Source: Haplodiscus bocki (Eukaryota). From it: a stretch of 64,000 bases of DNA. Made by a program: the position numbers and the translations under genes. The notes under the pieces are model-generated. The model saw nothing but the letters and a program-made list of their open reading frames with translations, did no database searches and was not told where the DNA came from. This document shows, one piece after another, positions 3,301-24,300 of this stretch. Positions within the stretch are counted from its first letter, which is position 1, and each line of letters starts with the position of its first letter. The DNA lies in assembly GCA_965655095.1 (NCBI GenBank), contig OZ296653.1:25172001-25236000 (forward strand). The letters run 5' to 3'.

Positions 3301-6300
3301 TATTCAGACAGATTTTGTCTGCAAAGGAGACAAAATTCACAGATCTGAATGTCTAAAGTAGTGCGCAACTCAACTATTTTCATGACACAACTTCCGTTTA
3401 GCTAAAAAAACTCAAGCACATTTTTGAGGGTTTTGAGTAGTATAGGAAGGGGGCTTTAGAGCCACTTATGACTCTTTCCATATTAGGACGTGTCGTTAGA
3501 GCCACTTATTGCTCCTCAATCTTAATACGTTACCAACTCCCAGTTTAACCTCATGACAGCTTTGACAGGTTATCTAGTTTAACTTTCTGACAGATTTCAA
3601 GCCACTTATTGCTCCTCAATCTTAAGACGTTACCAACTCCTAGTTTAACCTTATGACAGCTTTGACAGCTTATCTAGTTTAACTTTCTGACAGATTTCAA
3701 ACCTTGAAGCCAAGATTTCGCTGTGGTTCAAATATCGAATATTATACCAATACTGATGAAAATGTTCAAGCCTCATCATATTCTGAATTAATTCCTTAAG
3801 GGAATCCAAAATTTACCGAAACGAATTTCAAGAATTTGACCAATTTGAATAAATCAGAGCGCATTTTGCCTCAAATTTCAAAAATTGAGCTCAAATAGAG
3901 GAACATTGAAAAAAATTCACGAATTGAAATAGATTATACTAGCAAACAGTTCTGCCGGATCGGCAAATCGAACATTTCAATCGGTTCAATTCTTTTTAAT
4001 GATACGTTTTTTCAGTCACTGTCATCACGCGCAATGAATGAAGCAGGTGAGTGAAATTGGCGGACGATTCGACGATCTCACTCGCGTACTTCAATCGGCA
4101 GGATCGTCGCGACGTGAAAGCACAGTCACTGAGTTTCATTTACTTGCTTTTTGTTGGCTCGCTATTTTCACTGCTGACTCCGGTCTTTCAGTAATGACGT
4201 GAAAAAATTTTGATAGTTTTGAAAGCTGAGACACGGTTCAATCTCTCCATTTTTATAGGATTCTTTGAAAAATGTACGAATTCATTATATACTGCAATTT
4301 CAACCTCAATTTCGACAAGGAGTTTTTATATAGCTTACGATACTGAAACGTTTTAAGAATCCACTATTCTTTTTCAATGTTCCTCAGCAAAATGATTCGA
4401 TGTGACCATTGCCAAAAAGTAATCACATCGAAACGCACTTTGTATCAGCATATTCGCCAAAAACACAATAAAGTCGCCAAAAACACAATAAAGTCGCTAA
4501 AAACACAATAAAGAGCCAACATTGCATCTCCGGAAATTCGTTTGTGGTCATTGCAATCAAAATCTCTCTTCTTCCTTCAACCTTCTTCGCCACGTTCGAA
4601 ATAGTCATATATTAACTGGAAATTTCAAATGTCTTTCCTGTTTTATTGTATTTGGATGCGCTGAGTTGCTCGAAAGTCATGAAAAACAAATTCATTTACA
4701 AGCCTCCCCGTCTGCTAATTTTCAACGCGCTGTGTCCGATCACAACCTGCAAGCTTCTTGTGTTGAAACTTCGATCAATGATACTTTCAAGGTTTTCAGA
4801 GTAAACTTGGAACCAGAAAACGTGGAACCTTTCCAATTTCTAACCTCCAGTGAGGAGGGTATCAAATCATTTGTCAACGAAAAACTACCTTTTAACGGGT
4901 CGAACAGAGTTGGGATAACTATACATGTTAAACTGTGCAAGCCGTTGGAGGAGGAACGTGTTACTGTGCACTTTCATTCACCAATGGAGCGTGTTGCGCA
5001 TGAGTTAGTCCAAGACGATTTTATCAACATAACTGATGCAATAATTTCACAATTAAATGTGTATTGCTCTGGTGGCTCAGGATGGGTCGTAAAAACCCTA
5101 AAAACTTTGGAGATCAGGATAGCAGGCCCCTTCAAAGGAACAGCATCATCTTTTGCCCCTTCAAAGGAACAGCATCATCTTTTATCGAGACCCCAGCTGA
5201 ACTCAAAAACGTATACCGAAGTTTGCTCAACATAAAGAATAAAGATGAGTTCTGCTTTCTTTATTCTGTACTTGCTGGCTTATTTTCTCACAAAAAGCAT
5301 GTTGAGGGACGCTCTACTTATTCGCCGTACATGGACCAGCTTGTCTATAAACAATCTGATTTTCCAATGAGTTTAAGCAAAATTCCACGTTTTGAGGAAC
5401 TAAATAACGTTTCGATATCTGTTTATCGATTCGAACAAGGGGGGCTCCTGAATGTTTTTTATAGCAAAAAACCGAAAATGCCAACGAAAAGTGAAACTGT
5501 TTCTGCTTGTTGACCATGACAAAACACACTATTGCTTGATAAAGAACTTCTCGAACCTTATGCACCATCTGACTCGATCTTCGTCGAAAAGAGTTGGAGG
5601 CCCAAGAACTCGCTTCTGCGGCAACTGTATGCAATCAATTGTGAAACACAACTTTAGCAATCACGTTCAATTTTGTGAGCACCACAAACCGCTGGAAATA
5701 AAAATGCCAGGCAATAACAAAAAGCTGACTTTCGAAAACTGGCAAAAAACGCAATTAAATCCTTTTGTTGTACATGCCGGTCTAGAGGCAATTGATGTGG
5801 CTTCTGATGGTGCTGGTGAAAACAATATTCCAAACACAATCGAAATTGAACGACAATATCCTGCTAGCTTCGGAGCTATATTGATTAACTCCAAATGTAA
5901 GTGTTTTGCATAGCTTGTGGAACCTATAACTTGGCTGTTCTGAACTGCTATTTTTCAAATCAAATCATGTGGTGGGTTTTTGAAGTTTTGCGTTTTTTGT
6001 TTCAGCACAAATAATTGAGAAATCGGCTTCTTATCGGGGCGCAGATTGTATTTCAAAGCTTATGGAAACTCCCCGCTCGTGGTTGAAATGGATGTACAGT
6101 GAAAAGCAAACCTTCAGTTGGGTTCAAATTTCTGCCGCTGATCGTGAAAAACATCTCTCGCCAATGACAACCAATTGTTGCATATGTGGAGATTCAGTTA
6201 CTCAATCCGAGCGTGCTTTTCATCACTGTCAATTAACTGGTAAAGTTTTCAGAGTGGCCCATTCCTCCTTCAACTCAAAAGCGAGATCAACAAGTTATCT

Positions 6301-9300
6301 GCCAATATTTTTCCATAATCTTTCACGTTACGATGCTCATCACATTATCAAAAATCTGACTCTTCTCTCGGGTGAAAATTTGTCTGCCATTTCTCGAACC
6401 GACGAAACGTATACTTCTTTTAGCGTTTCTGTTCCTGTCGGTTCTTATTATACAAAGAATCATAAAAATGCAACATTTATAAACAACCTCAGATTTCTCG
6501 ACAGTTTCCAGTTCATGTCTCAAAGTTTAGACTCTAGCGAAAACTTTGAAAACTGATGACTTTTCGTTATTAAAGACGTTTTTTCCTTCGACACATCCGA
6601 CAGTGGATTGGAAGTTACTCACTGGAAAAGGCCATTTTGCATAGTCCTATTTGGACTCATTCGCAAAGTTCGAAAGACTTTTACCCAATTATGGAGACGA
6701 CTGGAAAAACACCTTGACTGGCAACCTTGACATTTCCAAGGCAGACGTTGCCCAGGCCTTCAAAATTTACACCTTGTTTGGTTGTCGCAACTTGGGCGAT
6801 TACCATGATGTGTATTTACGGACTGATGTTTTAATTCTAGCTGATGCTTTTGAGAAAGTCCGGCAAGTTTGTATGAAAGTGTACAAACTAGATTCAGTTC
6901 CCTTCTCAGCCCCCAACCTAAGCTGGGACGCAATGCTAATTACTAATCGCGTCGATTTGGGTCTTTTGAGTGATATTGACAAGTTGCTGTTTTTTGAGAG
7001 AGGAATTCGTTGAGGTATTAAGGAAATTGGTGAGCTACGCCATTTCCGAGCTAATAATAGAGATTTGGATGTCTTTGATGAATCAAAAGCAAATGTTTAC
7101 GGTGCGTTTTTTGATGTTACTTTTCTTTATGCCGGTACCATGCAACAAACTTTACCTGTGGACAGTTATTATTGGAATGAAACAATTACATTGAGACAAC
7201 TCCTTGCTACCAGCGACGATTCAGTTGTTGGATTTTTTGGAGAAGTCAATAGCACCTATCCGTCTCCTCTGCATGACTCTCTCAATGATTTGCCTCTGGC
7301 ACCCGAAAAGATATTGATTCAAAAGTCATGGTTATCTCCCTACGCACAACCTTTCAATGTCAAATTACGAAGTCACGGTCGAGAAAAACTAGTTGAGACA
7401 TTATTGGATAAGATTCGTTACATTTGCCACTACCGAAACCTTAAATTTTGCGTCAATCAGGGTCTCAAAGTTCGAAAGCTTCATCGTGTAATTCAATTCC
7501 GTCAAAGCAAATGGCAAGGTGATTACATTTCGAAAAATAATATTATGAGGAAGCAAGCAAATGATTTCGAGAAATATTTCTATGAATTATTGAGCAATGC
7601 TTGTTCCGGAAAGACTATGAAAAACTTCCGAAATCGAAGAGAAATTCTTTTTGTCAACAACGAAAAACAAGCTGAGAAATCGTTGTTAAAACCTACATTC
7701 AAATCTTATCAAATTATTCATGATGGATTGGTCTCCGTTTCCTTCGCCCCGAGTAAGATTGTTTGGTCAAAGCCTACCCCTGTGGGAGCGTCCATACTTG
7801 ATTTGTCTAAACTGAGCCTCTACAAGTTCCACTACGATGAAATGAAACCACGTTTTGGTGACAAAAGAAAAGTTGGCTACAAAGACACGGACTCACTTTT
7901 GTATAGAGTAGAGACTGAAAACTTATACTCAGAAATGGCCACCTTCAAGCACCTCTTGGACTTGTCAGATTACCCCGAAGAGCATTTTCTACATGACAAA
8001 ACGAATAAAAAGGTTCCGCTCATGATGACAGATGAATTGCAGGGGAAAGTATTGAGTGAAGTTGTTTGCCTCCAATTGAAACTTTATAGTATTCAATTTG
8101 AAGGCGGTGTCAAACGGAGTGCAAAAGGAGTACAAAAAACTGTCAAAAAACCCTAAATCACGATTTGTTTAAAGAATGTTTGCTGAGCAAAGGAAAAGTG
8201 AAACGGTTCATGACCCAACTTAGATCTAAAAACCATCAAATTGTTGTCAGTCGTGTTTACAAAGTAGCCCTGAGCAGTTATGATGACAAACGGTATCTAC
8301 TCAATGACGGCATTCATTCGCCCGGATACGGACACTACAGAATTAAGGGACAGCCATGCAGCAATGGTTAATTTCTTTTTCACATTTCCTGGTTACGTTC
8401 ACGATCTAAAACCCTGACAACCTTTTCTTTGTTTCTCAGAATCCGACGTTTCCTCGCTGCTCAGTCAAAACGACGATAAAAGTGATAATGAAAGTTCCTA
8501 CTACTCCAACAATGCTCGAAGTGACACAGAAGTAGATGACAGCCAACGCGCAACTCCGCCAACTTTACACAATTTCCTGCAACATCACGACTGTTCTTGT
8601 TAGAAAGCTTCAATTGCTCTTTCTCATCATTGGTTTTCATTTTCCTGGAATTATAAAATCGTGAATTTTAGCGCCTCCGGACCCTGGTTTCCACCAATCT
8701 CACTACTCAGACGTCAATAATGATGAGCATTGCATTGAATGGGACCGCTTCGATGAAGTGGTCGCAGAAGCTGAACAAGTTGAACCCAGCAATACGTGTC
8801 CCTTCATAGACTGGGAGGCGTTACAGTCGATTGATGATGATGTTGATGAAAATTCCCATGGTAGCACTAGCAACAATGATACTGCAGCGTCCGCCAATAA
8901 AAGATGTAAACTTGTTCTCTATAGTGATAGCAGTGACACTGACAATTAGTATGAAAATTTATTCATCGTAATTACTCTGAGTATAACAAACTTTATATCC
9001 AAAATTACATTTACAGTGTATATGGAAATAACGTACAATGTCAATCTCTGAAACAGTTGTTAGTTTGGAAAGGAAACGGTTGGTGACAGATTGTATTTTT
9101 GATGTGAAGCTTTTACTTCTTTTACAAAAGAAAGTACAGAGGTTTTCAGCAAAGTGAATTTCATTTAGGTAGTGGGCCATAAACAAACAGTACAGTCCGC
9201 ATAAGTTAGAACTCGGATTTTGCATAGGGAAAGTTATCTCAAATGCTCTGATCGTTCTCGATGAAAGGGCAGTTAATCGTTTTTGTATTTTTCTGTAACT

Positions 9301-12300
9301 TTTGATGGGCTCAACGAGAGGATCCCATAGGAAAATCGTTATTATTGCATCATTAGACGCTAAAGCCTGCTTTCTTGAAGGATCAATTAAAATGTATGAC
9401 AGCAAAAACCAATGCTGTCCCGCTTCGGTCTGGGCTGCACTGTTTACAATTTGATAGATAAATTTTTGGCCAGTTGTCACAGCAGAGTTTAGTATTTCCT
9501 CAAGATCTCGACCCGAAAAAAAGTTGTCAGATGAAGCCACACCAATAAATTTTTTTTGAAAAGTTTGGGACAGCAGTTATCCGCCAATTGAATTAAACTG
9601 AAAGTATCCATTGACCAACGCCGAATTCTTCGAAATATTTCGAGAATTGTCAATAAAAAATTGACTGAATCTTTCTCCAATCAGAAATAACTCGACTGCC
9701 TCAGGTAAAGCTTTGCTGAAAGACAATTTCAACGTTTTTCCTGCTCCCGTCAATTCGGGAAAAAATGTCAAACTTTTGCTAGCTTCTCTTGTTGATGTTA
9801 GATCGAATACTAGGTAGAAATGGTTATCCTGATAGTCTTCCAAGGTAATGCCGTTGCCGCCACGTTCGAATCCCAAAGCTGTAAAGGTATTGTAAAACAG
9901 GCGTGTGTCGTTTGATGTATCCAATGGTGTCCCTGCTATTGGTAAACCGTTTCCTCTCAGTAACTCGATCTTTCGCAGGTCAAATTTTTCAGAACTAAAA
10001 GGCGTTGAAGCCGTCGTTGTTCCGCGGAAAAAACGATTCCGAACCATGCACATTGTTAAGCGACGAAAGGGTTCAGTGCCAAAGATGTTTTCTCTTACAC
10101 AGCAATTTTATCTGGATTGTATCATAAAGCTTTTTGTTGAATTTTCTATGTACGGATATACCGCATAACTCTTTGTGAGCGCCCGTTCAATGCAAAGTTT
10201 CACGGTATCCGACAAGACAATCTTGTTTACAAACAGGGACGCTTTGTCAATTACAACAACAGGCGGATTTTTATCAAGACTTTTAACTAATCTGCATCCA
10301 AATCGGTCAAAGTTTCCAAAGTGCAAAGGTTGGGCGATCGATAGAGGGGTAAGTGAAGTGTCACGCCTGGCAGTAGTAACCGCTCGCAATCCAAAAAGTC
10401 AATATGTGGAGCTCCATAGAGGTAAAGTGAGCACTTACCATATTCAGCAAATTTTTTCATGATTATGTTTATCACTTCTAGATTTTTTCTTTGTTTCGTC
10501 GATAACGGTAGCCTTGGCAAACGGTCCATGTCCTTTTGCTAAGTGGGTCGGTTGTTAATTCTGTTTCAACAAAGGCGGTGTGATGGTAGTTGTTGTTACT
10601 ACTGGATATCAATTTGCCGTTCAGAATTCAACGTGTGAAAACAAAGAGTGTAGCGTGTTGTTGGAAAAAAGTAAATTGTCCGGCGTTGCAGCATCTTTTC
10701 CACCTGGGTTGTATAATTTTACGTCCAATCCCAAACAAATTCGGTTCAAATCAATGCAGTTTTTATTGTCTGATGTGACAAAAAAATCTAGCTAAGGCCC
10801 TTTGCAACCTACATGAGGAAAAACTTCTTGATCGAAGGATCCTTCGTAATTTATCAGTACGGTTGGTCTCTCAAAAAAGTCAAGAGCGCTGTGGGTTACG
10901 TGATATGCAATTTCACTTGAGGTTCCAAAATACGTTTTGGTTGCTACTGCTGGTATTCATCACTCCTTCCTTCGTTATGTGATGCTTGCTAATCAGGTTC
11001 TTTACCAGTTGTGGAACGCCACACCAGAGAGTATATCGGACCGACTTCTCGCAAAATTTTTCCGATTAATGACTTCTTCCAATTTATTGTCCCGTGTTCG
11101 CCGCCCAGACGAAGGCCCGCTCCCCGCCCGTTGCCTGTCGGCTCCATCGCTCGTCACTCGCCCGCCCGGCCGCTGCCCGCCCGCTCCGTCCCGCCGCGGC
11201 GTGCCAAGCGGTCGCACAACCTCAGATACACTTACAATTGTTTTTTTTTAAGTAAATGCGCGAGCAATAACTCTTTTTGAAGAAGCGGCGGCGGCGGAGG
11301 TGGTTGAAGCAATGGTTTTTGAAGCGCTTTTTTTCAATGTTTCTCCCAGCACAGTCTTTGGTCTTTTCCTACCCGAGATGACGTTTGAGATTTCCGGCAC
11401 AAATGACGATAACAAGTTCTTTCCAAATTCTTTGGCCACAGGCATCGCGTATTGTTTTAGGAGAGGGATCGCCACGTGGCCCATACGCATGGCGAATGCT
11501 CCCAATCCTCCAGATCCATACTGACGCGCCGGCCCGCGGAACGTAACTGCATTGGGAGTTCCAATCGTCTTTTGCCCCCTTTGATTGGCAAAGTGAGCAT
11601 CCATCAATCTGTCTCGTTTCATTTTTCTCCGTGTCTCTTCTTCCAACGACCACAGTACAGGAGATGCTCTTTTATGACTGACTCTTGTTACAGATTGTCA
11701 ACGGACAATTGTTGTTGCTGATAGTCAGATGGATGAATGGAAGCTGCCTACAAGGAGCATGACTGCTTCATCTAACTTCCAATTTAGAGAATGAGGAAAT
11801 TGACAAAGTTTAGAAAGAAGCACGTGGAGCTTAAGAAGGATGACAACAACCACAAAGAAAGCAAAAAAACTCGTGGGCTGTTGCGCTAGAGTTTAATTTG
11901 TTTGTCTATATTGCAAAGTCAAGTTTGTTCTTCCTCGACTCAAAAAATGAATGAGACCGCCCGCTTCATTTCGAAGAGCAATGGTTAATGAATGAATTGA
12001 AGACTTTATCACTCGACGCCATTGAATTCTGGTGAACGTTCGCTGTCTTTTGTTGTCACCAAGTGGTACGGCTCTGACTAGTGCTGTTTGTGTCTCCGAG
12101 TATTTCGTTTTGAACCAAATCACAGTAAACTAACATAGTGTGACATCCTGCTGTTAGATCAACAGGATAGTTACCAATTTGCTCGCTCATTTGGCCGCGT
12201 CTTTCAACTTTTTTTGGTTTCTTGCAGTCTTGCGGCACCTCCAAAATCATGACTTCCTTCAGGCTGTTTGGCGTCATTATTTGTTTGGCTACAGTCAACT

Positions 12301-15300
12301 AAGTAATCCAAACCGAGTATGTTTCTCAAATCTTCGGAAACGGCTTTGAGCCGGATTTTTTTTCGTTTCTTTATTTGAAGTCGTGCTGAATTTGACGTGC
12401 AGTAACTGGGATTCTTCGCAAATGTCCCAGCTAAGTGGCAAATGACTGATATCCCATCCAACACTGCTGCAGAGGTTGTCACACATGGACTGGAGGATAG
12501 AGGTGACCGAACTGTAACAGCCTTTCGTTATAAAAAAATACTTCTCTGGAGGAAATTTTTCTAAAAGCGTAGAACTGTTCCGTTTGAGCAGGTTCCTGGG
12601 AACATACATGGAAATCATTCCGTTACCAAAACGCGGCCGCTCAACAATAGTTTCTTGTGTTGATGTATCACGGTTTTGTTTATCTCGATTGAGTTGATAG
12701 CTGAACAGACCTTCTGTCACGTTTTCAATCAATCCGGGCCATGACAACTCCACCAAGGAAACCTCCCATGTACCGTAGAGGACCAGGGATTGTGGCAGTA
12801 AGGTTGTGAATTTAGCGAGCGTGTTATCGGGAAACGTTGACATGGAAGCGTTAGAGACCAAGTTAATGGTGAAACTTTGCTGTTGACTCATCTTTCACTT
12901 TATAGCCAAGTATTGTGTGCTCTGCTCGTTGTCTTTCTCGAATCGTACTAGCTCGCTCTCGTAGAATTTTCCTCGAATCAACTGATTATTGCAATCTCTT
13001 AGAGTAAGTGGGGGGATTCAGTGTTTCCACTGCTGCAACCTGGAATACCTCCTCAGTAATTTGGATGCGATATCCACGATGCAAAAAGATCTATTTCGCG
13101 ACGAATGCGAACGTTCTGTCCGAGTTTGAACTTTGGTTTTTTGATGGCGTTACAATTTTGTAAGGATACTAGAAACGATTCGTCAAGAGTTTTTCACCTG
13201 GTTTGGCGCCAGCTTTGTGACTTGATTGATTCTGGAATTGATGATGTCAACAAATGCTTGTAATTGTTCATGATACACTTCAGTGTTGTTTCCGTGGAGA
13301 TATTTGAAAATCAGAGCTTTGATTGATCTAATGCTCTTCTCAGGAAACACCGATTTGGTTTAACTACATGTCTAATAGAAATGGATTCCCGATTGTTGAC
13401 AAAAATTGGCAAACTCGCGTGCAAATTCCCGGCCTTGATCTACCCAAAATTTTTCTGGGTCTGGTGATACAGGCCTCGATCCACGGCAGAACCGAGGTTG
13501 CAAAAGTGGTGGACCCCATTTATTGCCCTCAATGACGTCAATTAGAGCTTGTCGACAGGCTGCTGCTGTTTTTCATTTAAGTGGAACAACCCACAAGAAT
13601 CGGCTGAGTGTATCCACTGCAGCAAAAAGAAACGTTATTCCCTGATTGAATTCTGAGAGCTGCTGCATATCAGGCAAGTCAATTGACCAGATTTCATTGA
13701 GTCGGTAACTTTGAACTTTTAGTCTTGTGAAGTTTCTGCAAGCTTGTTTAAATATTGTGTAGGTTTCACTTTTTTGTAGGAAATTGTCACCTTGTTTAAA
13801 GGTGCAATTTGACTCCTTCTTCAGGGAACTCTGGCTTCCAAAAGAGGCAGGATTTTGACAGGACGTGTATATGTTTTGTAGCTTACTGTATGCTATCGTC
13901 TTTTGAGTCGCTGGAACCAAACGACGCGTTGTTGAACACTTTGAACACAAGAAATTCTCCCCTCTATATTTTGAGTACTCGGTTACAGTTGTCAAACCAC
14001 TGCATTTGTAATGAACCCAACCGCAAACGTTGCACCAAATTGAGGGTTGTTTAGGCGATCCTTTTCCGAGAGCCTTTTGACAGTTGCCACAAGTGTATTT
14101 TTTTGCGTTTGCCTTTCGTCGTTTAACCATGATAAACTAAAACTACCGCCCTCTTCTTGGGATGATTTTGACAGCTGTGGTTGTTTACTTCAGCATAGAC
14201 GCAGCCATTTGGCGTGTTCATTATTGGGTCCAGGATATGATTTGAATGGGCTTTCATCGTCTTCGTTTGAGTCACTTTTCATTTTTGATGCCACTTTTTT
14301 AGCAAAAGTGTTTGCGAGAAGGTATCCTGGTATACGCAAACGTCTCACCAAGTCCAGGCTTAAATCGTCAATCTTTTTAGTAGGTACTTGAATATCGGAA
14401 AGAAAATCTAAAACTGCCAATCCAGTGTCTGTGACGTGTAGGCAGATTCTCCCATAAATGTTGTTGATAGAAACATGCTCACTGTTGCTGATTTTTCTAA
14501 GGATTTGTCGGGCTCGCTCGACCTTGCCACCACTCAAACCGCAAGACAAAAGGTCCAACATAACATTTTGATTTCACAGCTGTCGCTGCGTCCTCAGTTC
14601 GTTTGGCGTCAGAGAGAGTGCTCGTTGTTGCTTTGCCGAACCTTGTCTTCAAATTCATTTGCGCACATTCTGATGCTCTTGGAAAGTCACAAGGAGTATC
14701 GATTGAGTTTTCTAGATTACCTTTTGCACAAATTTCCAGACTCGTACTTCTAGTGTCAATCGGGTTCACGAAATTGTGGTTGTCATTTGAGATTTTGCCC
14801 GCTACAAGCGATGAGTATTCATCGAGTGTTATAAGGATGAATTCTTTTGTCCTACCACTCGATGGCATGGCGTACTTCTAAATGACGTGAAATCGAAGGT
14901 TGTATCAAAGCGAGCAGTTTCAATCCGTGGCTAGCTGACAAAATTTGCATTAATCCCACTTTCTTGTTACATAAAATTTCTATCAATCTTCTGTGCCTCT
15001 CAAGTTTTTTCTGGGAAACATTCTGAGCCATTGCAATATGCCCACTGACAATGTTCAAAAGACAGTTACAGAAAAATTTTATATTTTCTTCTGAACAATG
15101 TAAAAGATACAAACGCCTCATGATTGGTTTCATGTTAACGAAAAATTCAAACATATAAAGCTCTTAATGACTCATTGGTCAAGTTTTCTCTAGTATAGCT
15201 TGATGATACAAAGAAATCCGATGGTCCAGTTCGTGAGCAGTTGGAGCAGAATTTTAGTTTAGCATCCGTGTGCGAATCAAAATCAATCATCAAATGACCG

Positions 15301-18300
15301 AAAGGGGCCTGTGTTGCCTTTTTATATGCGTCGATTAGTAGTTGTCGATCTCCCATTTGTCGGCCGAGCACACCTATCTGTTCCAAGTCACGGGGCTCTT
15401 GAACAAAATCATCTGTGTAACATTCAATCGATTGTCTTTGAAAGCTTTGATTGTTGAAGAAGATTATGCTTCAGTGCAATCAAATGGATATTTCGATGTC
15501 TTACCGCAACTACCAAGTTTAGAAAGTATTCATCTTCGCAAGCTTGCTGATACAAATCGTCAATTACCACAAGTGTTCTCAGTTTTTGAGCTTCGCATTT
15601 TTCAACTGCTGACCAGTGAAGGCCCTGATGAAACTCAATGGAATGCTTTTTTGACTGACGCAGTTGACCAAGAGGGTATCGAAATCTTTCTGGTAATGAT
15701 TATATAGGTAAACAATTTTATCAAAACATGGTTGGAAAATTTTGCTTTGATTCTTTAACATATTCGATACTAATTGCGTTTTGCCGCTCCCACAGGGTCC
15801 TACAATGGAAATGAAGCAATGAGGGTCGGTGCGAATGCGCTTATCCATTGTTTTCCTTTTGGTACCAAGTAACCGATGCACGTTGACAAAATTGCGATAA
15901 TCCCAGTTTGCAATGAACTCAGCGAAAGCTAGGTAGGCAATGGAGAAGATTACAGTCGCACCAATCATGAAGTAATGAAAAAAAGTACTAAAAAGGAGCG
16001 GTTACATTCAATCTTGTCCGAACAGCAGCCGCAATTGAGCTGAAATGGAGGTCTTTCTGTTTCATTACCATCAAAGATGAAATCATTTAAGTTTACGTGA
16101 TCTGCCAAATCTACGGCTACAGGCTTGATTGTTGATTCCTCAGTCACTTGCGATGCTAATGTCGTAGTGTCTTTTTTCATTGTGATAAGTGGTTCTTGAA
16201 TGCGTATAAGTTGAATATGATTTGAATTGTTTGGTTTAGTCTTGCTAGATCAGTTAAGGTCAGCCGGATATTCGATTGCTTACCATTGCTATTTTGCTCA
16301 ATCAAAATTTTGGGATTTTGCGTTGGAAGAGAGGCCTTCAGCAAGACTCTCTCGGGAATAGGTAATGAGATGGTAATCGCAGGCAACTCCAGTGCAAATG
16401 ACATCGAGCTCGCCAATTTTTGTAATGATTAGCATGCAAACTGCTCGTAAAGTGTTCCGTGGAACAACTTCAGTTAAAGCCAGTACGCTAAACCAGATAA
16501 ACGTCCAAGCAGCATGTTATCCGCAAGCAGCGGTTTTTCTGTAACTGCGTAAACATAACCCGGACCTAAATCGAAATTACTCTTCATGAATCCAAACGCG
16601 TCGTGAAAAACCGCATGCATACGGAAAAGTTTGAAATAATTCAAGCAACGATCCATGTAGCTTCTGCCGGGACCTATTAGCCCGCCATAGGGAGCGAAAT
16701 CGTTTATATCATTTAGATTTATGTTTTTATCTAGACAGTAGCAAACTGCCAGAAACGCGTTTTCACTTTCCGGATTTCTCGAAAAAAGATAATTTACTTG
16801 GTCGAAATTGTCTTTCAATTGTTGTACAATAACTAACTCTCGCATGATCTCTACGTATCCGAAAAACCAACTGCTTTTGTCCAGTTTTCAATTGATAATG
16901 AATTGGCTACACAAATTGAGCATTGTCATTCATGAAAGAAAACAAATTAGTATCAAAGTTGAAATCTTTTCTCTCATTACCCTCGAAAACAGAGTCTGAA
17001 GCTTCGGTGCATTCATTACTTTGGCACTGGGCATTGGAAAATCCAAGATCCACTTTGAGAACACTATTATGGTGAGCAATGTTGATGTTCCCGAAACCAC
17101 GTTGAAGCAAATTGATAAAATCAATCACACAATCTTTGAAAATTGAGTTGGACTTCTGCAGCTCCGGCAATTTTCTGCACAGATAAAATAGTTTCTCGGC
17201 GTCTTCATTCTCGTCGAACTCACTGTAACAAGATCGCTGTAATTACCACACGTTTTCAAATTTGCATCCCAAGTCTTTTATTGATTCAAATTGCAACATC
17301 GATTTCATTCTCGCGCCATGTATGAAGAGTCGGTTGCCTCCATAACTTGCTTCTCTCTTTGTACAGTTCTCCGGATACGACACTGTAAACAACTTGACAA
17401 AACTGTTTCGAATTTTTAAAGGTGGTTTTGCTCTAGGGATATTTTCACTGATGCTTTCTTTTATGAAGTTCTCGGCTCCCACGAAAGCTTTCAAGTTGAG
17501 GAAAATGTGGTAATTCTCTCCAGCAAAGTTCGAACAAACATATTCTGTTTCAGAAAAAAGTTCCTGTAATGTGGCATCGTATGGTGTATTCACAATGTGT
17601 GCTGCTTAACAGGGTTTTTAGGAAGCGACAAAAGCTTTTGGGCAGTTTTGGTTGCTGAAACTCATTCGCATACCTAACAATTTTCGAAGGAGGCTCTTCA
17701 TGCTCTTCCCATTCGCCTTCTTCAGTAGATGAGAAAACCAAGTAATGGAATTGTGATGGAGCACACTTGTCATCGCGAATTTTCACAGTAGAATGGTCAG
17801 TGATTTCACTTATCTCTTATCAGGTTACTTGTCAGGTTATGCAATTCCGAAATTTCCGTTTCTATGGTTTTTTTCCCAAATCAAATGACGTTGTTGCTAG
17901 CACAGTTCCATTGCCCTTCCCGTGGTTTTGGTTTTTGTCCGAAAACAACGTGCTTTGGTTGTTATACTGTGCTAGCTGCGATCTGGTTTAACATCAAATT
18001 GGTCTCTTCTGTGGGAAGTCGATTTTTTCGACTCCTCACAGTTGCAATTAACAATTATTTTTCATTCTTTGCGTTTCCCCTGGTTTACGATCTTTGGAAA
18101 TTATCGAATGCAAACATGGTGTGGATCAAATTTTGAAAGTTAGTTTTGCATATTTAACAGAAATTTAACTTTAAACTCTTTGACATCGTTCAAAATATGC
18201 CAATCGTACTTCATTTTGTTTTTGTTCAAACAACTTCCATAGCTGTCGCAAAGTTAGACTAGATGAGCTGTTGGAGCTGTCATAAAGTTAAACTAGGAGT

Positions 18301-21300
18301 TGGTAACGTATTAAGATTGAGGAGCAATAATTGGCTCTAAAGGCACGTCCTCATATGGAAAGAGTCATAAAAGGCTCTAAACCCCCCTTCCTATACTACT
18401 GTTTTGTGATTATTTTGAAGAATTCGATAAGAAGGCTTTCCCCGGCTCACCAACTATGGCCACCGTATCGTGATCTCAATGTTTGAGCAACCCGGATAAA
18501 AAGCTATTTTAAGTCCCTGTTAAGGTTTCCGTCCTTTTTAAAGCACCTGTTCTCGGCAAAATTTAAAAAATCCTACACGGCTCATAGAAAACCTCTATAC
18601 ATTCATGGGCAGACCAAGAACCACTAAGCCACACGCGCTTTGATACCTCCTATGTGCCGGAAGCCTCTGAGCAGTTCTTGTCTAGTTTCACATATCCATT
18701 CCTTTACAAAGATGAGTACTAACGTTCATTTTGAGAGAAAGATTTGCAAGTTGATGGACTCCATAAAAGCACAGCTCTATCCTTTAGAGTCTCGACGGAC
18801 CCGCAGGACTTTGTGTCATTGACAGAAGCACTTCTGAGATGAGGAATCGCAGCTTGGAACTGGGCACCGATGTTGATTGCAGGCTCCAGGACCTCTTCTT
18901 CCGATTTATCCTCCACACTGAAGCTGCCCGACACACCTAAACACAAATCATAACTCATAAAACGCATATCGCCCAACAAATTGAATTCAGGAATGGGAAC
19001 GGCCTGTGGTATCCGGTGCGGCATAGAGCACCATGCCCTCTCTCAAACGGCGGAGGAAAAACCGTATATGGCAAACACCGAGCATTGCTCTTTCTCCGTG
19101 CAAAAACAGTAATAAAATTGAGAAACTTGACATAAGTTCTGTGATTTTCAACTTGTCGTAGCATAGCATAGGTGGACTAAAAACTAATTTTCCCATTGTA
19201 CATGTCGAAAGCCACTGGAAGCGTTATTGTTCCAAAAAATATAAATACTCATCTAATAGATAAAGAAATGCTGAAAACAGGTTTTTTTTAACTTGCTGTA
19301 TACGACGCTGTATATAGTTTATGGCAGCGTAAAAACTGTATAAGGTGACGTTAGCTGTATACAGCAAATTACCCATCAGTAGTATAGGGATTCACATGGT
19401 TTTTCGCGGGTCAATCGTTTCGCGGTTGAATCTTTAGTCTCCTTCAATCTTTTCGCAGACTGTTAAATAAAGGAAAGTAAAATGATCACAGAATTGTCCA
19501 CGGCGAAGTTATGAAAACTATTTAACATAGCAGATGTCTAGACATAAATTATTTACAAGCCAAGATTCACCTGCTACTGATTTAGGATTCACATGCGAAA
19601 AGATTGTCATAATCCTAAGATTGGGGTGCAAAAACCATGTGAATACCTATACTACTCCCATCCCTAATGATATTTTAATCCTTCCACCCGTTATATCAAT
19701 GCTAATATTTGAAATTGCATGTGAAAACTACGGCCTGTGAATAGTGCCTGCTTAAGTCAATCATGCAAAAAATGAAGAAAGCTTCTTCAAAAATAATTGC
19801 CGCAGTTTCTTGGTGAAAGCAAACTTGAAAGAAAATAGCGACAATTCTGGGGGTGAAGAGACGTCTAATAGGGAAGGCTAATTTCAAGAATAATGGCAAC
19901 ATTTCTGGGGAAAGACGCAGTCTTATGGGCAGAGCAAATTTTAGGGAAAATAGCGATATTTGCAACGAAAAGTGCCAAGTAAAAATCATAGCACACGCTC
20001 CTAAGGAAAACTTCCGCCCCAGGAAACACTTTTATGAATGCATGGTACTCAAAATAATCAATTCAATAACTACAGCACTAACTGCTTCGTTTCAAAGGTT
20101 TGTTGACAGAGGAAATGGGCGTGGTCGCCGCGAACTGAGAGGCAAAGAGACCACTGCCATTGCGTAAGGGACAAAGCATTGGAGGTGGCGTGTAAGGCAC
20201 AGCCGTCGCAGGTCCAGATGAATCTCCTCCCCCAATGCCTCCGGCTGAGGGACAGTCCCCGGTAGAGAGCCCTGTTTCTTTCTTTGATCCTCCTATACTT
20301 GGCGCAGAAGATGAACTTATCTTCAGATTTGATGAAAGTCGGCCCAGACCTGATTTGCCCTTGGCTATGAAGTCGTGTCTGAAGCATACATACAAACCGT
20401 CTAGTGATTACTTTCATCTAACCGTTTAAAATCTGGCGTGAAAAGTTCGCAAACTAGGCTGAACAGGGAGCATTGGTAGTTCAATGTTCTTTAAGGTCAC
20501 CTACGTGACCCAAAATATTCCTCTTCATATATTCAACAATGAATATCAATTACTCGGAAGGTAAATTTATAGCATTCACCTGATGCTTGATTCTAAATAC
20601 TGTATGCGTTTTCTTTTCTTTTCATATCTCACGTTACAAAAACATTACAAGATCGTTTTTAGCTTTTCAAAAAGTATGTTCAAACAAAAGAAGCACAAAC
20701 CTTGGTGACCTGAGCCAACTCTGGTACACACCAGTTCCTCCACTGCCAGTAGACGTGCCGAGATAGTCTCGTGCTATATTCAAAGACGGAGGTTTTGATT
20801 TACGTTTTATGCTTTGGTAATTGGGTAACGAGGATCGAGGATCGTGGGGAATCTTGAAGATGCCTCCTTCGGATGGTGAGTCATCCTGTGAACTGGATTC
20901 GCTGGTTGTGGTCGCTGAATGATGTCTTGGGGGCCCCACGGCTGACGGCGAGCTAACAAGGTCAGCGGAGTCACTGTCGATTGAAAGCGACGCTTCCGTT
21001 TTACGATGTTTAGCTACAGCAGAAAGATTTTCGTCAAACACCACTGCTGACGTCGCCACTCTTCCCATCCCATTATTTACCCCCGTAGAAGCCGTTAAAG
21101 GGGACACCCCAGGAGAAGAAGTTCCACCCGGAGACTGTCTGATAGGACTTCTAATGGTTCCTTTAGGTGTCGTTGATATGTTTTGATTACCTAAACAGCC
21201 AAACTTACCAGTGTTTCCAAAATATTAGTGAATTTTAAATGTTAATACCGTATTAACACTCATTAGCTCCAATTACAGAAATTTTACCCAAGGCGTATTG

Positions 21301-24300
21301 GCATTGCCGAAACCAAATTTACAACTTGGATGTCCGGAGAGGGATCTAGATGCCCTAAAATTTGCAGTCTTTGCATCATTTTAGGAATACTAGTTTTGAG
21401 AAACCATCAAAGAGATAGACAATACTATCACATAAAACCTAATTTGATTTAAATTTGAGGAAAATCCGCATTCTTTACAATTTCAGGAAGGCGAAACAAA
21501 GCATTGATACCAACAATGCCCATTAAATTGTCCAGAGTACCTCAAGGAACTTTTATAATTTTTGAATTTTACTAAAAAAAAAACAGCAATAAACCGTATT
21601 ATTTTGACACTAACCCTTGAATATGTGATAGGAAGATACGATTGGTGTATTTTTTGTTTCCATTGGTGATTTGGGAGGTACATCGAAAGTGAAAACACTG
21701 TCGTTGGTTTTGGGCGTTTCCAAAGGTGTAATACCCGTGGGCATTTTCATTTGGAAACCACCACCCTCGTTCGAAGCCCCGCCTAGAGGCGGCATAAAAG
21801 AGCTCCCATCAGTGTCTTTATTATTTCTTCCTGAAATGTGAGCACCGCTTCTTACACCACAGCGTAAGAGATTTTCGTTTGATTCTGAGAAATGTCCGTG
21901 GTACTGCAAGGCTCTGTCGCTGAATGAGAAATGGGCAGAGTAGTCTGATGGGTTAGTAGGGGTAGCGCAAGCAGCTGCAGAAGTGTTGTTATTCATAGAG
22001 TTTGGCTGCTGAACTTTGCTGGGATGAGCGCAATAGGCATTCGCAGAGCCGGCCGTACCTTGAAAGTTGCTTTGCTGTCTAATAGTTTTATGATCCACGG
22101 CCGCTAACACGCTGATATTTTCGTCCGGAGTATATGGCGTTCGCTCTCCAGCAGCTATTTGTGTCGAGCAAGAGGAATTGCTGCTGGAGCTTTTATCAGA
22201 CAAGCGACGTTTCATTTGCAGTTCACGTTCACTTTTCTCTTCGTCCATCTGCTTCAAATCACTCGTTATGTATTCATCAACAACGTTCAAAAACTCATCC
22301 AGAGGCTGTTTTGGATGCAATTTTGTTTCATCAACCGACGCGCTTCTGTATTTATTGCATTCCGGCAGAGGAGAAGACAGGTCGTCCAGAGAACTTATCT
22401 CCAGACTTCTGTGCGCCGGTCTTACAGAACTAGGTCTTCCTTTGCTACCTGTCATGGCGGATGCGGTCGTAATTCCACTGGGCATAGAAACTCTTGTGGG
22501 TCTAATGGCTGTCGTGAACCGATTAGGACTCGGATGTCTCATGGCTGACTGGCTATTCAAACCAGTAGGTGAGGCCATCTCCGAGTTCGGGAGATCCTGT
22601 TGTCTCGAATTTTGGTCAGTTTTTAGCCGAACCAAGTTTCTCGACGTCGGCGAACTCCAAGGACTTTGTGCCATCTTCAGAAGTTTCTCTCCTTCGAAGA
22701 ACTTTCCTTTTAGGCTTCTTTCCAATAAAGGACAATGCTCTTCATGGGCTTGAAGTTTGGTGTCATTTGTAAGATTTTTTGAACAATTGGGTGTTGTTAG
22801 ATCAGAGTATGAAGTTAACGGCGGGCAGGAAGTCGTTCTTTTTGAAACTCGCAATTGGCAGTTTCTGCAGAAATGAAGGTGTTGCTTTGCCAGAGAATGA
22901 TGTACAGTTTTTGTGTAAGGCAAAGGATTTGAAAAGCAACGTCTCTTGTCATATTCTGAAACAAAAGTAATTGCTTACCCAGCCAGTAAATCGAAGCAAG
23001 GGGCAACAATGATTAGATATCCAAACTTTCAAAATCCAGTTACAAACGCAAATACTTCATTTCACGGTTCTTCAAAAAACGGGTTCATCAATTGCCCAAA
23101 TCAGCCTGCTCTCAAATCCTCATTTCAGGAAGTGGATATGAATGTTCTACAAACCAATTCCTGCCAAAGAAGATGATCTAATGTCCAGATGATTCCTTTT
23201 CGAATAATCCACAGATAGAAAATTGTAATAATGTCTATCGGGTGAAACAACTCTATCAGCAGTTTTAGTCTGGGCCTCAAGAACTGATAGTGTGGAATTT
23301 TCCAAGCGGTGGTGACAGACTTCGGTGAAACATTTGGTTGCTTTCACACGTGAGTGGTATGTTTGGTTAGTAGGATCAGTTTTCCAGCTGATTCGCTTCC
23401 TTTTACGAGCTCCTTTTTCGGTAGGGGTCTGCAAATAATGAAATGTCAAAACACCGAACTGATCATGGGGATACAAATGCACTGATGTATTTGATACAAG
23501 CAACCTTCCTGCCTGGTTTCAAAGATAACTATTCACTGCTAATTAGGAAACTCAAAATGATAAAACACGTTATTACTGATAAACATCAAAAAAACGAATA
23601 AAAACTTACTCGTAAGTAGCTCTACGGGATCTTCTTAGCAAATTTAATTTTGAAACATCACCTTGTCGATCAGAATTCGCTTTTCTCATTTTAATTGATT
23701 AATTTTTTTTCGCATTCTTATTAATTCTCAAACTACGGTTTTACTGAAAACAGGAACTAACATAAAACGTTTTTGTTAAAGAGATTTCCACATTAGAGAA
23801 CCATGAAGTTCGTATAAAGACGTCTTTTCCAACAACAAAGATAGCCACACAAGGCGGACAGGACTTCAAAAAATTTGGAATTTTTTATCAGCTTGATCTC
23901 ACCAGCTCGATGCTTGTCCATAGCTTTACCCCTTTACTCTAAAGCCGTTTGCCTGCAAATTAGGAGAACAATCAAAAATTTTCAAATTTGGTCTGTGGCA
24001 TTTTGTATTAATATAGTAATATGATTTTTTTTCGAAATTGGGCGTTCTCAACATTACTCCACTACTATGATGGTCCGTATGCTTCCTCTTATACTCACTT
24101 TCCTGCCTTTAGAAAATAATTTCAAGTTTTTCATCTTTTGACTGGTGGGGAAGGGGATTAACACTATAAAGATCCCAATTTTTTTCAACATGTCGCACGA
24201 AAATGCTTATGTCGAACGAAGTCGCAAAATGTCGAACCAAAAAGCGTCGAACAACGAAAACCAAGTACCATTAAGCCTAAAATATCTGGTAGAATTTGAG

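What the first reader, a model, noticed from the sequence alone, without database searches (positions are those of the whole stretch)
19378..19656. 279-bp mini-element with Polinton termini and its own 6-bp TSD: candidate Polinton-parasitising MITE
Seen: 27-bp TIRs (26/27 match), perfect TSD CCCATC, no credible gene. The first 11 nt (AGTAGTATAGG) are identical to the Polinton ends 1 kb away, but the sequence is unrelated beyond that. It also has internal inverted repeats (13 bp at 19445-19457/19594-19606; 9 bp at 19461-19469/19519-19527) and a second GGATTCACATG near 19585. Known: AG..CT ends with short terminal repeats and 6-bp TSDs are Polinton hallmarks, and the ends act as origin and integrase substrate. 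Inference: a minimal non-autonomous element mobilised in trans by Polinton integrase/pPolB, i.e. a helper-satellite pair; it would also define the minimal cis requirement. Alternatively it is the remnant of a different Polinton family after a large internal deletion.
Basis: partly seen in the sequence, partly recalled or inferred. Interest (0 to 1): 0.82.

Follow-up and report, generated by a model that had tools for sequence, protein, structure and literature searches.

The report
Tiny non-coding element with Polinton ends
A 279-base, gene-less DNA element carries the same outermost 11 bases as the large virus-like Polinton transposons of its host and the same 6-base insertion footprint, so it is most likely a miniature hitch-hiker that uses their integration enzyme, although how many copies of it exist could not be counted.

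Summary
Its outermost 11 nt occur only four times in 64 kb, at its own two ends and at the two ends of a 14,965-bp Polinton 977 bp away. That neighbour has many stops and frame changes, so it is a poor helper candidate. A second Polinton family in the same assembly is 16.1 kb, multi-copy and intact-looking. It has the same 11-mer at both ends and a 6-bp duplication. A pattern asking only for the 11-mer at both ends about 270 bp apart found seven credible mini-elements in other metagenomes and none in 596 Gb of prokaryotic genomes. An eighth, 154-bp one lay on one of those contigs. Three of the six testable ones have perfect 6-bp duplications, and four form a family inserted at different sites. 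So small elements with Polinton ends do move as small elements. For the window's own element no second copy and no long parent were found, because the host assembly could not be searched at DNA level. Verdict: real, a non-autonomous Polinton-type mini-element. Mobilisation in trans is inferred, and an in-place deletion remnant is not excluded. Moderately interesting.

The parts
19378..19656 (.). The mini-element: 279 bp, non-coding, 37% G+C
   Evidence: Bounded by a TIR and a duplication. As single-stranded DNA it folds into a long hairpin: -46.3 kcal/mol, z = -7.1, 0 of 200 shuffles as good. There is no ORF over 37 aa inside it. It is single-copy in the window.
19372..19377 (.). Left copy of the 6-bp target-site duplication CCCATC
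   Evidence: Read directly; found again by the pair scan.
19657..19662 (.). Right copy of the 6-bp target-site duplication CCCATC
19378..19404 (+). Left terminal inverted repeat, 27 nt. The first 11 nt are the Polinton terminal motif, which begins with a doubled AGT.
19630..19656 (-). Right terminal inverted repeat, 27 nt, with one mismatch at position 12 from the end
19388..19398 (+). GGATTCACATG motif, copy inside the left TIR. Further copies lie at 19563-19573 (9/11), 19585-19595 (11/11) and, inverted, at 19636-19646 (10/11).
   Evidence: (D1). Only one other match at 1 mismatch or fewer exists in the rest of the 64 kb, and none at any sampled Polinton end.
19402..19433 (+). Two tandem 16-nt units (13/16 identical), just inside the left TIR
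   Evidence: D2.
19445..19457 (+). Subterminal 13-nt motif CAATCTTTTCGCA. Its perfect inverted partner is at 19594-19606.
   Evidence: I9. It is absent from all other loci.
3436..18400 (+). Neighbouring Polinton/Maverick element, 14,965 bp, decayed. It is not part of the mini-element but is the source of the comparison.
   Evidence: The TIRs are 3436-3593 and 18243-18400 (158 nt, 89%). The 6-bp duplication GTTTTG lies at 3430-3435 and 18401-18406.
4531..8362 (+). [quoted passage not shown]
   Evidence: PF03175 matches on two ORF pieces. Against the two polymerase ORFs of the L002 element it gives 6 aligned pieces in up to 3 frames, with 8 in-frame stops inside the pieces.
8989..9552 (-). Adenain/Ulp1-like cysteine protease gene of the neighbour, an open 193-aa ORF
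   Evidence: Weak matches to PF02902 and PF00770. One piece, no stop.
12937..14100 (-). Retroviral-type (rve) integrase gene of the neighbour, broken
   Evidence: It aligns to the 407-aa rve integrase of L002 (PF00665) at 49% identity over 96% of its length, with 6 in-frame stops.
15153..15848 (-). A32-like packaging ATPase gene of the neighbour, broken
   Evidence: A P-loop ORF piece. Against the L002 ATPase it gives 2 pieces in 2 frames with 2 stops. The comparators carry PF04665.
18719..19024 (-). Host exon encoding an ELM2 domain, 354 bp from the mini-element
   Evidence: PF01448, E = 5.7e-7, above the curated cut-off.
21610..22923 (-). Long open host exon on the same strand. With the ELM2 exon it places the mini-element in a probable intron of a minus-strand host gene.
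   Evidence: 437-aa ORF. The only database match is the window's own product.

Best explanation
The feature is a miniature, non-autonomous element of the Polinton/Maverick kind. It is 279 bp of non-coding DNA, and its two ends carry the terminal sequence that this host's Polintons carry. It was inserted here as a small element by a Polinton retroviral-type (rve) integrase made by another, intact Polinton in the genome. The integrase joins the two AG...CT ends to a target cut with a 6-base stagger, and repair of the stagger leaves the duplicated CCCATC. What is shown: the structure, the 6-bp duplication, the shared 11-nt terminus, the Polinton nature of the elements that share it, and the existence elsewhere of small elements with the same ends and the same footprint, some forming a family. 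What is inferred: supply of the integrase in trans, the identity of the helper, and how copies are made. The best helper candidate is the 16.1-kb multi-copy family seen in L002/L020/L021, not the decayed neighbour. The doubled AGT at the very end is the kind of terminal reiteration that protein-primed polymerases use to recover the terminal bases. Copying by the Polinton polymerase is therefore possible, but it is only a conjecture. The element's own repeated motifs (GGATTCACATG four times; the 13-nt inverted pair) differ from those in the Polinton TIRs. Their role is unknown.
For: (1) Exact structure. (2) The 11-mer occurs in the window only at the four element ends (0.23 expected). (3) The neighbour is a Polinton, with pPolB, protease, rve integrase, ATPase, a 158-nt TIR and a 6-bp duplication. 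(4) A second family whose pPolB is 59% identical has the same 11-mer at both ends. It measures 16,129 bp, has the duplication GTTAGG and long open genes including a 407-aa rve integrase. Its proteins sit in clusters of 14-45 members at 90% identity or more, on different contigs. (5) Among 9 sampled Polinton ends only the outermost 7-11 nt are shared while the rest of the TIRs differ. Sharing only the tip is therefore the normal relation between Polinton families here. (6) The pattern '11-mer, 242-272 nt, inverted 11-mer' found 9 loci in JGI metagenomes and none in 596 Gb of prokaryotic genomes or in IMG/VR. Seven of the nine are TIR elements of 266-283 bp, and a further 154-bp one lies on L010. 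Their duplications are 6/6 in L017, L018 and L010:1270-1423, 5/6 in L013 and L015, and 4/6 in L012. (7) L010, L012, L015 and L017 share length and an 18-nt subterminal motif in both arms but lie at different sites, so they spread as mini-elements. (8) The two ends of the 154-bp element share only the terminal motif with each other, yet its duplication is perfect.
Against: No second copy of this element was found. It is the only one in about 200 kb of the same assembly. Its 22-nt TIR start is absent from IMG/VR, JGI metagenomes and GTDB genomes. No ORF-derived relative was found. The assembly it comes from could not be searched at DNA level, so these negatives are weak. No long element with its 27-nt TIR was found among the 9 sampled Polinton ends. 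A run of five or more G follows the terminal motif in 8 of 9 Polinton ends but in only 1 of 18 mini-element ends. The minis may therefore depend on a Polinton lineage, or another integrase-bearing element, that was not sampled. The hosts of the JGI minis are unknown, and no Polinton was seen on those short contigs. Positions 1-11 of the JGI minis, and 1-6 or 1-7 of most sampled Polinton ends, were fixed by the search patterns. Their invariance there is therefore partly by design.
Confidence: 0.7

Rival explanations
1. One-off remnant. A full-length Polinton of another family inserted here and made the CCCATC duplication. A later internal deletion in place then removed everything except about 140 bp at each end. 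On this reading the 279-bp form never moved.
For: Only one copy is seen in all the sequence that could be examined (17, 44, 45). Decayed Polintons are common in this genome. A deletion remnant would keep the ends and the duplication.
Against: The Polintons bounded here have TIRs of 91-158 nt or more, and 8 of 9 ends have a G-run just inside the tip. The arms of the mini-element are inverted repeats for only 27 nt plus a separate 13-nt motif, and they have no G-run. No trace of Polinton coding sequence or TIR sequence remains inside. Elements of the same size and build elsewhere form a family at different sites, which shows that the small form is itself mobile.
Confidence: 0.2
2. The mini-elements belong to a different autonomous partner that has the same terminal motif but is not a classical Polinton. 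Candidates are an unsampled integrase-bearing element or a distinct Polinton lineage without the G-run. The shared 11-mer would then reflect related integrases rather than use of the sampled Polintons.
For: The G-run contrast, 8/9 against 1/18. Position 12 is G in 12 of 18 mini-element ends but in none of the 9 Polinton ends. The subterminal motifs of the minis are absent from the sampled Polinton ends.
Against: Every long element seen with this terminus encodes pPolB and an rve integrase. The 6-bp duplication is the Polinton footprint. Only 9 ends out of more than 200 polymerase relatives were sampled.
Confidence: 0.08
3. Chance: an unrelated short inverted repeat that happens to start with the 11-mer and to be flanked by a 6-bp repeat.
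For: None beyond the fact that the element is single-copy in the data in hand.
Against: Expected 11-mer matches are 0.23 per window, and all four observed lie at element ends. No match to the 27-mer is expected by chance. A perfect 6-bp flank repeat has odds of 1 in 4096. There are no hits to the paired pattern in 596 Gb of prokaryotic DNA.
Confidence: 0.01

Closest known systems
Non-autonomous Polintons catalogued in Repbase (names seen in papers: Polinton-1N1_DR of zebrafish, PMC9341505; Polinton-N1A_NV of Nematostella, PMC11296320)
   Same: They are filed as Polinton derivatives that lack the full gene set and so depend on other copies. They have Polinton ends.
   Different: Their sequences and lengths could not be read with these tools. 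Polinton-N1A_NV still encodes a capsid protein (PMC11296320), so it is a large element. The present one is 279 bp, has no gene, and shares only 11 nt with the long elements.
Classical MITEs of cut-and-paste transposons (Stowaway with Tc1/mariner, Tourist with PIF/Harbinger; the piggyBac-type MITE in bioRxiv 10.1101/2025.02.07.637071)
   Same: Under 300 bp, terminal inverted repeats, a duplication of the length set by the helper's enzyme, no coding capacity, hairpin potential. Often only the terminal bases are shared with the autonomous partner.
   Different: Those use DDE transposases that excise and reinsert, with TA, TTA or TTAA duplications (general knowledge). Here the footprint is 6 bp, and the presumed enzyme is a retroviral-type integrase of a self-replicating, virus-like element. 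The source of new copies is therefore an open question.
TIR-only Polinton remnants in Caenorhabditis elegans (Polinton_CE_TIR; PMC11414722)
   Same: Polinton terminal sequences found at loci without the internal genes.
   Different: Those are 744-bp TIRs left by rearrangement and recombination. They are not compact two-ended units with their own duplication.
Minimal replication origins of protein-primed linear genomes (adenoviruses, phi29-like phages, linear plasmids); general knowledge, not tested here
   Same: A short reiteration at the extreme end (here AGT twice) and function concentrated in the outermost one to two dozen bases.
   Different: No evidence here that the mini-element is replicated by a protein-primed polymerase. 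This is a lead for how it might work, not a membership claim.

Membership tests
Polinton/Maverick, non-autonomous derivative | 6-bp target-site duplication | tested here: met
   CCCATC on both sides, not extendable. The same length is seen for the two bounded Polintons: GTTTTG and GTTAGG. The literature gives 6 bp (PMC3014272) or 5-8 bp (PMC10748475).
Polinton/Maverick, non-autonomous derivative | Terminal sequence shared with autonomous Polintons of the same genome | tested here: met
   11 of 11 outermost bases are identical to both ends of the window Polinton and of the L002/L020 element. Nothing is shared beyond that.
Polinton/Maverick, non-autonomous derivative | Long terminal inverted repeats (100-1,500 bp in full elements; PMC10748475) | tested here: not met
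   The TIR is 27 nt, plus a separate 13-nt inverted pair. This is a feature of the full-length elements and is not required of a miniature derivative.
Polinton/Maverick, non-autonomous derivative | A related autonomous element (pPolB plus rve integrase) with matching ends present in the genome | tested here: inconclusive
   Intact-looking Polintons with the same 11-mer are present and multi-copy. None of the 9 sampled ends has the full 27-nt TIR.
Polinton/Maverick, non-autonomous derivative | Several copies at different sites, each with its own duplication | not testable with these tools
   The source assembly (ENA ERZ26859043) can be reached only through protein look-ups. There is one copy in about 200 kb. 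The feature is met for analogous minis elsewhere.
MITE (structural class) | Short (under about 800 bp), TIRs, duplication, no coding capacity | tested here: met
   279 bp, 27-nt TIR, 6-bp duplication, longest internal ORF 37 aa.
MITE (structural class) | Stable hairpin potential | tested here: met
   z = -7.1 against 200 shuffles.
MITE (structural class) | High copy number | not testable with these tools
   See above. The exact-TIR scans of three collections were negative.
Polinton/Maverick, autonomous (the 14,965-bp neighbour) | pPolB, rve integrase, protease, packaging ATPase, TIRs, 6-bp duplication | tested here: met
   Three of these genes are broken, so it is a decayed member. Capsid genes were not tested.
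Other DNA-transposon superfamilies reported with 6-bp duplications (e.g. Dada; from memory) | Superfamily-specific termini and transposase | not tested
   No comparator sequence was available. The identity of the termini with Polintons of the same genome makes this unnecessary.

The most novel reading that the evidence does not exclude
Polinton-carrying genomes harbour a so far undescribed class of 150-280-bp MITE-like elements that need nothing from the Polinton except its outermost 11 or so bases. These would show that the integrase, and perhaps the protein-primed polymerase, recognises only the extreme tip (a doubled AGT plus four bases). They would also show that the G-run and the long TIRs of full elements serve something else. 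The window's element would be one family of this class, and the JGI elements several others.
Probability: 0.4. Interest if true: 0.7.

Novelty: new member of a known kind. Interest (0 to 1): 0.5.

Why it matters
Polintons are very widespread virus-like transposons of eukaryotes, yet how they integrate and copy themselves is still known almost entirely from sequence inference. Short elements that keep only the tip of the Polinton end and still show the 6-bp footprint act as natural deletion series. They indicate which bases the integration machinery needs (11 or fewer) and which conserved features of full elements are dispensable for insertion (the G-run and the long TIRs). They are also easy to miss or misfile in repeat annotation. 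On the practical side, a simple paired-end pattern proved enough to find such elements in unrelated data sets.

Tried and rejected
(1) Exact 22-nt TIR start (one N) in IMG/VR, JGI metagenomes and GTDB genomes: no hit.

(2) Phage-record blastn with the 279 bp: nothing. Rfam scan of the window: nothing.

(3) Word-based protein search with the 68-aa ORF that runs out of the element, as a proxy for other copies: no candidate. This is a weak test.

(4) Search for a long parent. Nine Polinton ends from seven elements in the source assembly and one other ENA assembly were read. None carries the mini-element's TIR or its internal motifs. A locus from a third assembly (L007) gave no recognisable end.

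(5) Shuffle-controlled local alignments of the arms past the 11-mer against all JGI mini arms and all Polinton TIRs: nothing survives multiple testing. The L010 TIR reads like the window's at positions 12-20 (8 of 9). This was noticed after the fact and I give it no weight. The 'CTCCTCAATCTT'-like patch shared with the neighbour's TIR is likewise not significant.

(6) L011 and L014 are the same AT-rich palindromic region from Antarctic rock metagenomes (PMC7171226). Their inverted repeat runs through the supposed ends and they have no duplication. I rejected them as unrelated.

(7) L019 is an 18-nt match to the neighbour's terminus, in an intergenic region of a giant-virus MAG contig (PCNA, VLTF3, kinase). 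It has no partner end and I treated it as chance.

(8) Linking the JGI minis to the source host through P0141, a JGI-held member of the L002 ATPase cluster: the look-up found no record.

(10) The large protein-representative search was not run.

(11) Several key papers are not in the held library, including Kapitonov and Jurka 2006 and the Krupovic/Koonin reviews. What I say about them is from memory and marked as such.

(12) The host organism was not identified. It is a eukaryote with an ELM2/C2H2 gene with long introns, probably an animal.
Full report
**1. The observation**

- Window 19378-19656 is bounded by 27-nt inverted repeats that differ at one position (I1).
- The flanks carry CCCATC at 19372-19377 and 19657-19662, and the repeat cannot be lengthened.
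- The 27-mer has no other match in the window at up to three mismatches, with none expected.
- The 11-mer AGTAGTATAGG, even with one mismatch allowed, occurs four times where 0.23 are expected. All four are the outermost bases of an inverted-repeat element: 3436(+), 18400(-), 19378(+) and 19656(-).
- There are also two tandem 16-nt units (D2) and a degenerate third direct copy of the GGATTCACATG motif.
- As single-stranded DNA the element folds into a long hairpin, z = -7.1.
- The longest ORF wholly inside is 37 aa.
- The window has no N.

**2. The surroundings**

The window comes from a 258,638-bp contig of an ENA long-read metagenome assembly (ERZ26859043, about 67x coverage). It is eukaryotic DNA.
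- A host exon with an ELM2 domain lies at 18719-19024 on the minus strand.
- A 437-aa open exon lies at 21610-22923 on the same strand.
- A C2H2 zinc-finger exon lies further up, at 34301-34912.
- The mini-element therefore sits in a probable intron, and the large element sits just downstream in the same gene.

The large element, 3436-18400 (14,965 bp), is a Polinton.
- It has 158-nt TIRs at 89% identity and the 6-bp duplication GTTTTG.
- It encodes a protein-primed family B polymerase (PF03175), an adenain/Ulp1-like protease and a P-loop ATPase.
- It also has a region that aligns over 96% of a 407-aa rve integrase from a relative.

It is decayed. The counts below come from alignment to intact relatives; I give counts and outer bounds only.

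| Gene | Aligned pieces | Frames | In-frame stops |
|---|---|---|---|
| Polymerase | 6 | up to 3 | 8 |
| Integrase | 1 | 1 | 6 |
| ATPase | 2 | 2 | 2 |
| Protease | 1 | 1 | 0 (open) |

This neighbour cannot now supply polymerase or integrase. The 977-bp distance between the two elements is not evidence of partnership.

**3. Polintons of this host**

The polymerase fragment has more than 200 relatives, almost all on long ENA metagenome contigs. Look-ups gave loci from the same assembly (L002, L004, L006, L008, L009, L020, L021) and from two other assemblies (L003, L005, L007).

The element in L002/L020 is the most informative.
- It is 16,129 bp, with TIRs of 91 nt or more at 96% identity.
- Both ends begin AGTAGTATAGGT followed by a long G-run.
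- Its duplication is GTTAGG, 6 of 6.
- Its long open genes include a polymerase carrying a C2H2 finger and an endonuclease VII domain, a protease, a 407-aa rve integrase and an A32-like ATPase.
- Its proteins belong to clusters of 14-45 members at 90% identity or more on different contigs. These include several full-length integrases.
- L021 is another copy.

So the same genome holds a young, multi-copy Polinton family with the same 11-nt tip as the mini-element. Its polymerase is only 59% identical to the neighbour's over the fragment compared.

Across nine ends of seven elements, only the outermost 7 bases are invariant, the next four are nearly so, and the rest of the TIRs are unrelated.
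- Caveat: I located most of these ends by searching for the first six or seven bases, so that invariance is partly by design. The ends of the window element and of L002/L020 are independently fixed by TIR and duplication.
- Sharing only the tip is therefore how Polinton families in this host relate to one another. It is not a reason to doubt that the mini-element is of their kind.
- One contrast remains unexplained. A run of five or more G follows the tip in 8 of 9 Polinton ends but in only 1 of 18 mini-element ends.

**4. Other copies**

The source assembly cannot be searched at DNA level with these tools.
- In the roughly 200 kb of it that I could read, the window's element is the only one.
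- Its TIR start is absent from IMG/VR, JGI metagenomes and GTDB genomes.
- A protein word search with the ORF that leaves the element found nothing.
- No sampled Polinton carries its TIR or its motifs.

The copy number of this family and its parent remain unknown.

**5. A class of such elements**

I searched for the 11-mer, 242-272 unspecified bases, and the inverted 11-mer.
- JGI metagenomes gave nine loci.
- 596 Gb of prokaryotic genomes gave none, and IMG/VR gave none.
- Two of the nine loci are one AT-rich palindromic region from Antarctic rock communities and were discarded (PMC7171226).
- The other seven are TIR elements of 266-283 bp.

| Element | Size (bp) | Flanking duplication |
|---|---|---|
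| L017 | 266 | CTTGAG, 6/6 |
| L018 | 278 | CCTATA, 6/6 |
| L013 | 283 | 5/6 |
| L015 | 272 | 5/6 |
| L012 | 276 | 4/6 |
| L010 | 273 | not testable |
| L016 | 282 | not testable |

(Sizes and duplications are.)

- In L010 and L016 the right flank is the exact reverse complement of the left flank up to the contig end. This is what a short-read assembler produces when it walks through a perfect TIR, so their duplications cannot be judged.
- L010 holds a further element of 154 bp at 1270-1423, with a perfect duplication CATGTC.
- The right arm of that 154-bp element is related to the arms of L015 and L017. Its left arm is related to nothing, so its two ends share only the terminal motif.
- L010, L012, L015 and L017 have similar lengths. 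L010, L012 and L015 carry the same 18-nt motif about 45 nt from each end, in inverted orientation. L017 carries a variant of that motif on one side. Their other parts have diverged.
- They lie at different sites with different flanks, which is the signature of a family that spread in its small form.

The window's element is not significantly similar to any of them past the tip. The hosts of these contigs are unknown, and no Polinton gene lies on them.

**6. Explanation**

The best reading is that the window's element is a non-autonomous Polinton-type mini-element, inserted as a small unit by an rve integrase supplied by an intact Polinton. The L002 family is the best candidate helper.
- Shown: structure, footprint, shared tip, the Polinton nature of the long elements with that tip, and the mobility of comparable small elements elsewhere.
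- Inferred: action in trans, the helper's identity and the source of new copies.
- The doubled AGT at the extreme end is the kind of terminal reiteration used in protein-primed replication (general knowledge). This makes copying by the Polinton polymerase conceivable but untested.

Rivals:
- An in-place deletion of a full Polinton of another family (about 0.2). It is weakened by the short TIR, the missing G-run, the absence of any Polinton remnant inside, and the evidence that such small forms move.
- Dependence on an unsampled partner with the same tip (about 0.08).
- Chance (about 0.01).

**7. Comparison with what is known**

- Polintons are described as 13-25 kb with 100-1,500-bp TIRs and 5-8-bp duplications (PMC10748475). 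A lizard study reports 6 bp, long TIRs and an apparent absence of non-autonomous copies (PMC3014272).
- Non-autonomous Polintons exist as Repbase entries: Polinton-1N1_DR (PMC9341505) and Polinton-N1A_NV, which still has a capsid gene (PMC11296320). Tlr1 elements were once viewed that way (PMC5499653). TIR-only remnants are known in C. elegans (PMC11414722).
- Five full-text searches found no paper describing MITE-sized Polinton derivatives. The library lacks many subscription papers and Repbase itself, so I do not claim that they are undescribed.
- I therefore file the finding as a new member of a known kind (a non-autonomous Polinton derivative of MITE form). The possibility that the class as a whole is new to the literature is given separately.

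Noticed in passing
window 3436-3460 and 18376-18400; L002:5462-5490; L020:8793; L021:8790; L003:8049; L004:5493; L005:21021; L008:7385: A run of five or more G follows the terminal motif within 30 nt in 8 of 9 Polinton ends, but in only 1 of 18 mini-element ends. It may serve a function that only full-length elements need, or it may mark a lineage difference.
   Followed up: partly
window 3495-3693: The left TIR of the neighbouring Polinton contains a tandem duplication of a unit of about 100 bp. Both copies match the single unit in the right TIR (I1 and I2).
   Followed up: no
L010:1270-1423 and 2739-3011; L017:1380: Two mini-elements lie within 3 kb on one short metagenome contig, and a third terminal motif lies near the end of another contig. 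This suggests high density in that unknown host, although these contigs were selected for having one.
   Followed up: partly
L010:2739-3048; L016:4461-4756: The contig ends fold back. The sequence after the right TIR is the exact reverse complement of the left flank. This is probably an assembly artefact caused by perfect TIRs of 47-68 nt.
   Followed up: yes
L002:7771-9936; window 4522-5235: The Polinton polymerase genes here start with a C2H2 zinc finger and, in L002, carry an endonuclease VII domain ahead of the polymerase domain.
   Followed up: no
L004:13700-21461: Downstream of the polymerase gene the called genes repeat with a period of about 3.37 kb, at least two and a half times. This is a tandem array inside or next to that Polinton.
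   Followed up: no
L019:1288-1305: The first 18 nt of the neighbour's terminus occur once in an intergenic region of a giant-virus MAG contig that encodes PCNA, VLTF3 and a kinase. There is no partner end, and I treated it as chance.
   Followed up: partly
window 25699-25730 and 38106-38137: A 32-nt inverted pair (91%) lies 12.4 kb apart in AT-rich sequence (I3). One search showed no clear element boundary or duplication there.
   Followed up: partly
window 18719-19024, 21610-22923, 34301-34912 (minus strand): Host exons with an ELM2 domain and a C2H2 finger suggest a single large minus-strand gene. Both the Polinton and the mini-element appear to be inserted in its introns.
   Followed up: partly
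L005:21669-21683 onward; L003:1826-2260: Other mobile elements flank the sampled Polintons: a Tc1/mariner-type transposase gene and a retrotransposon RNase H fragment.
   Followed up: no
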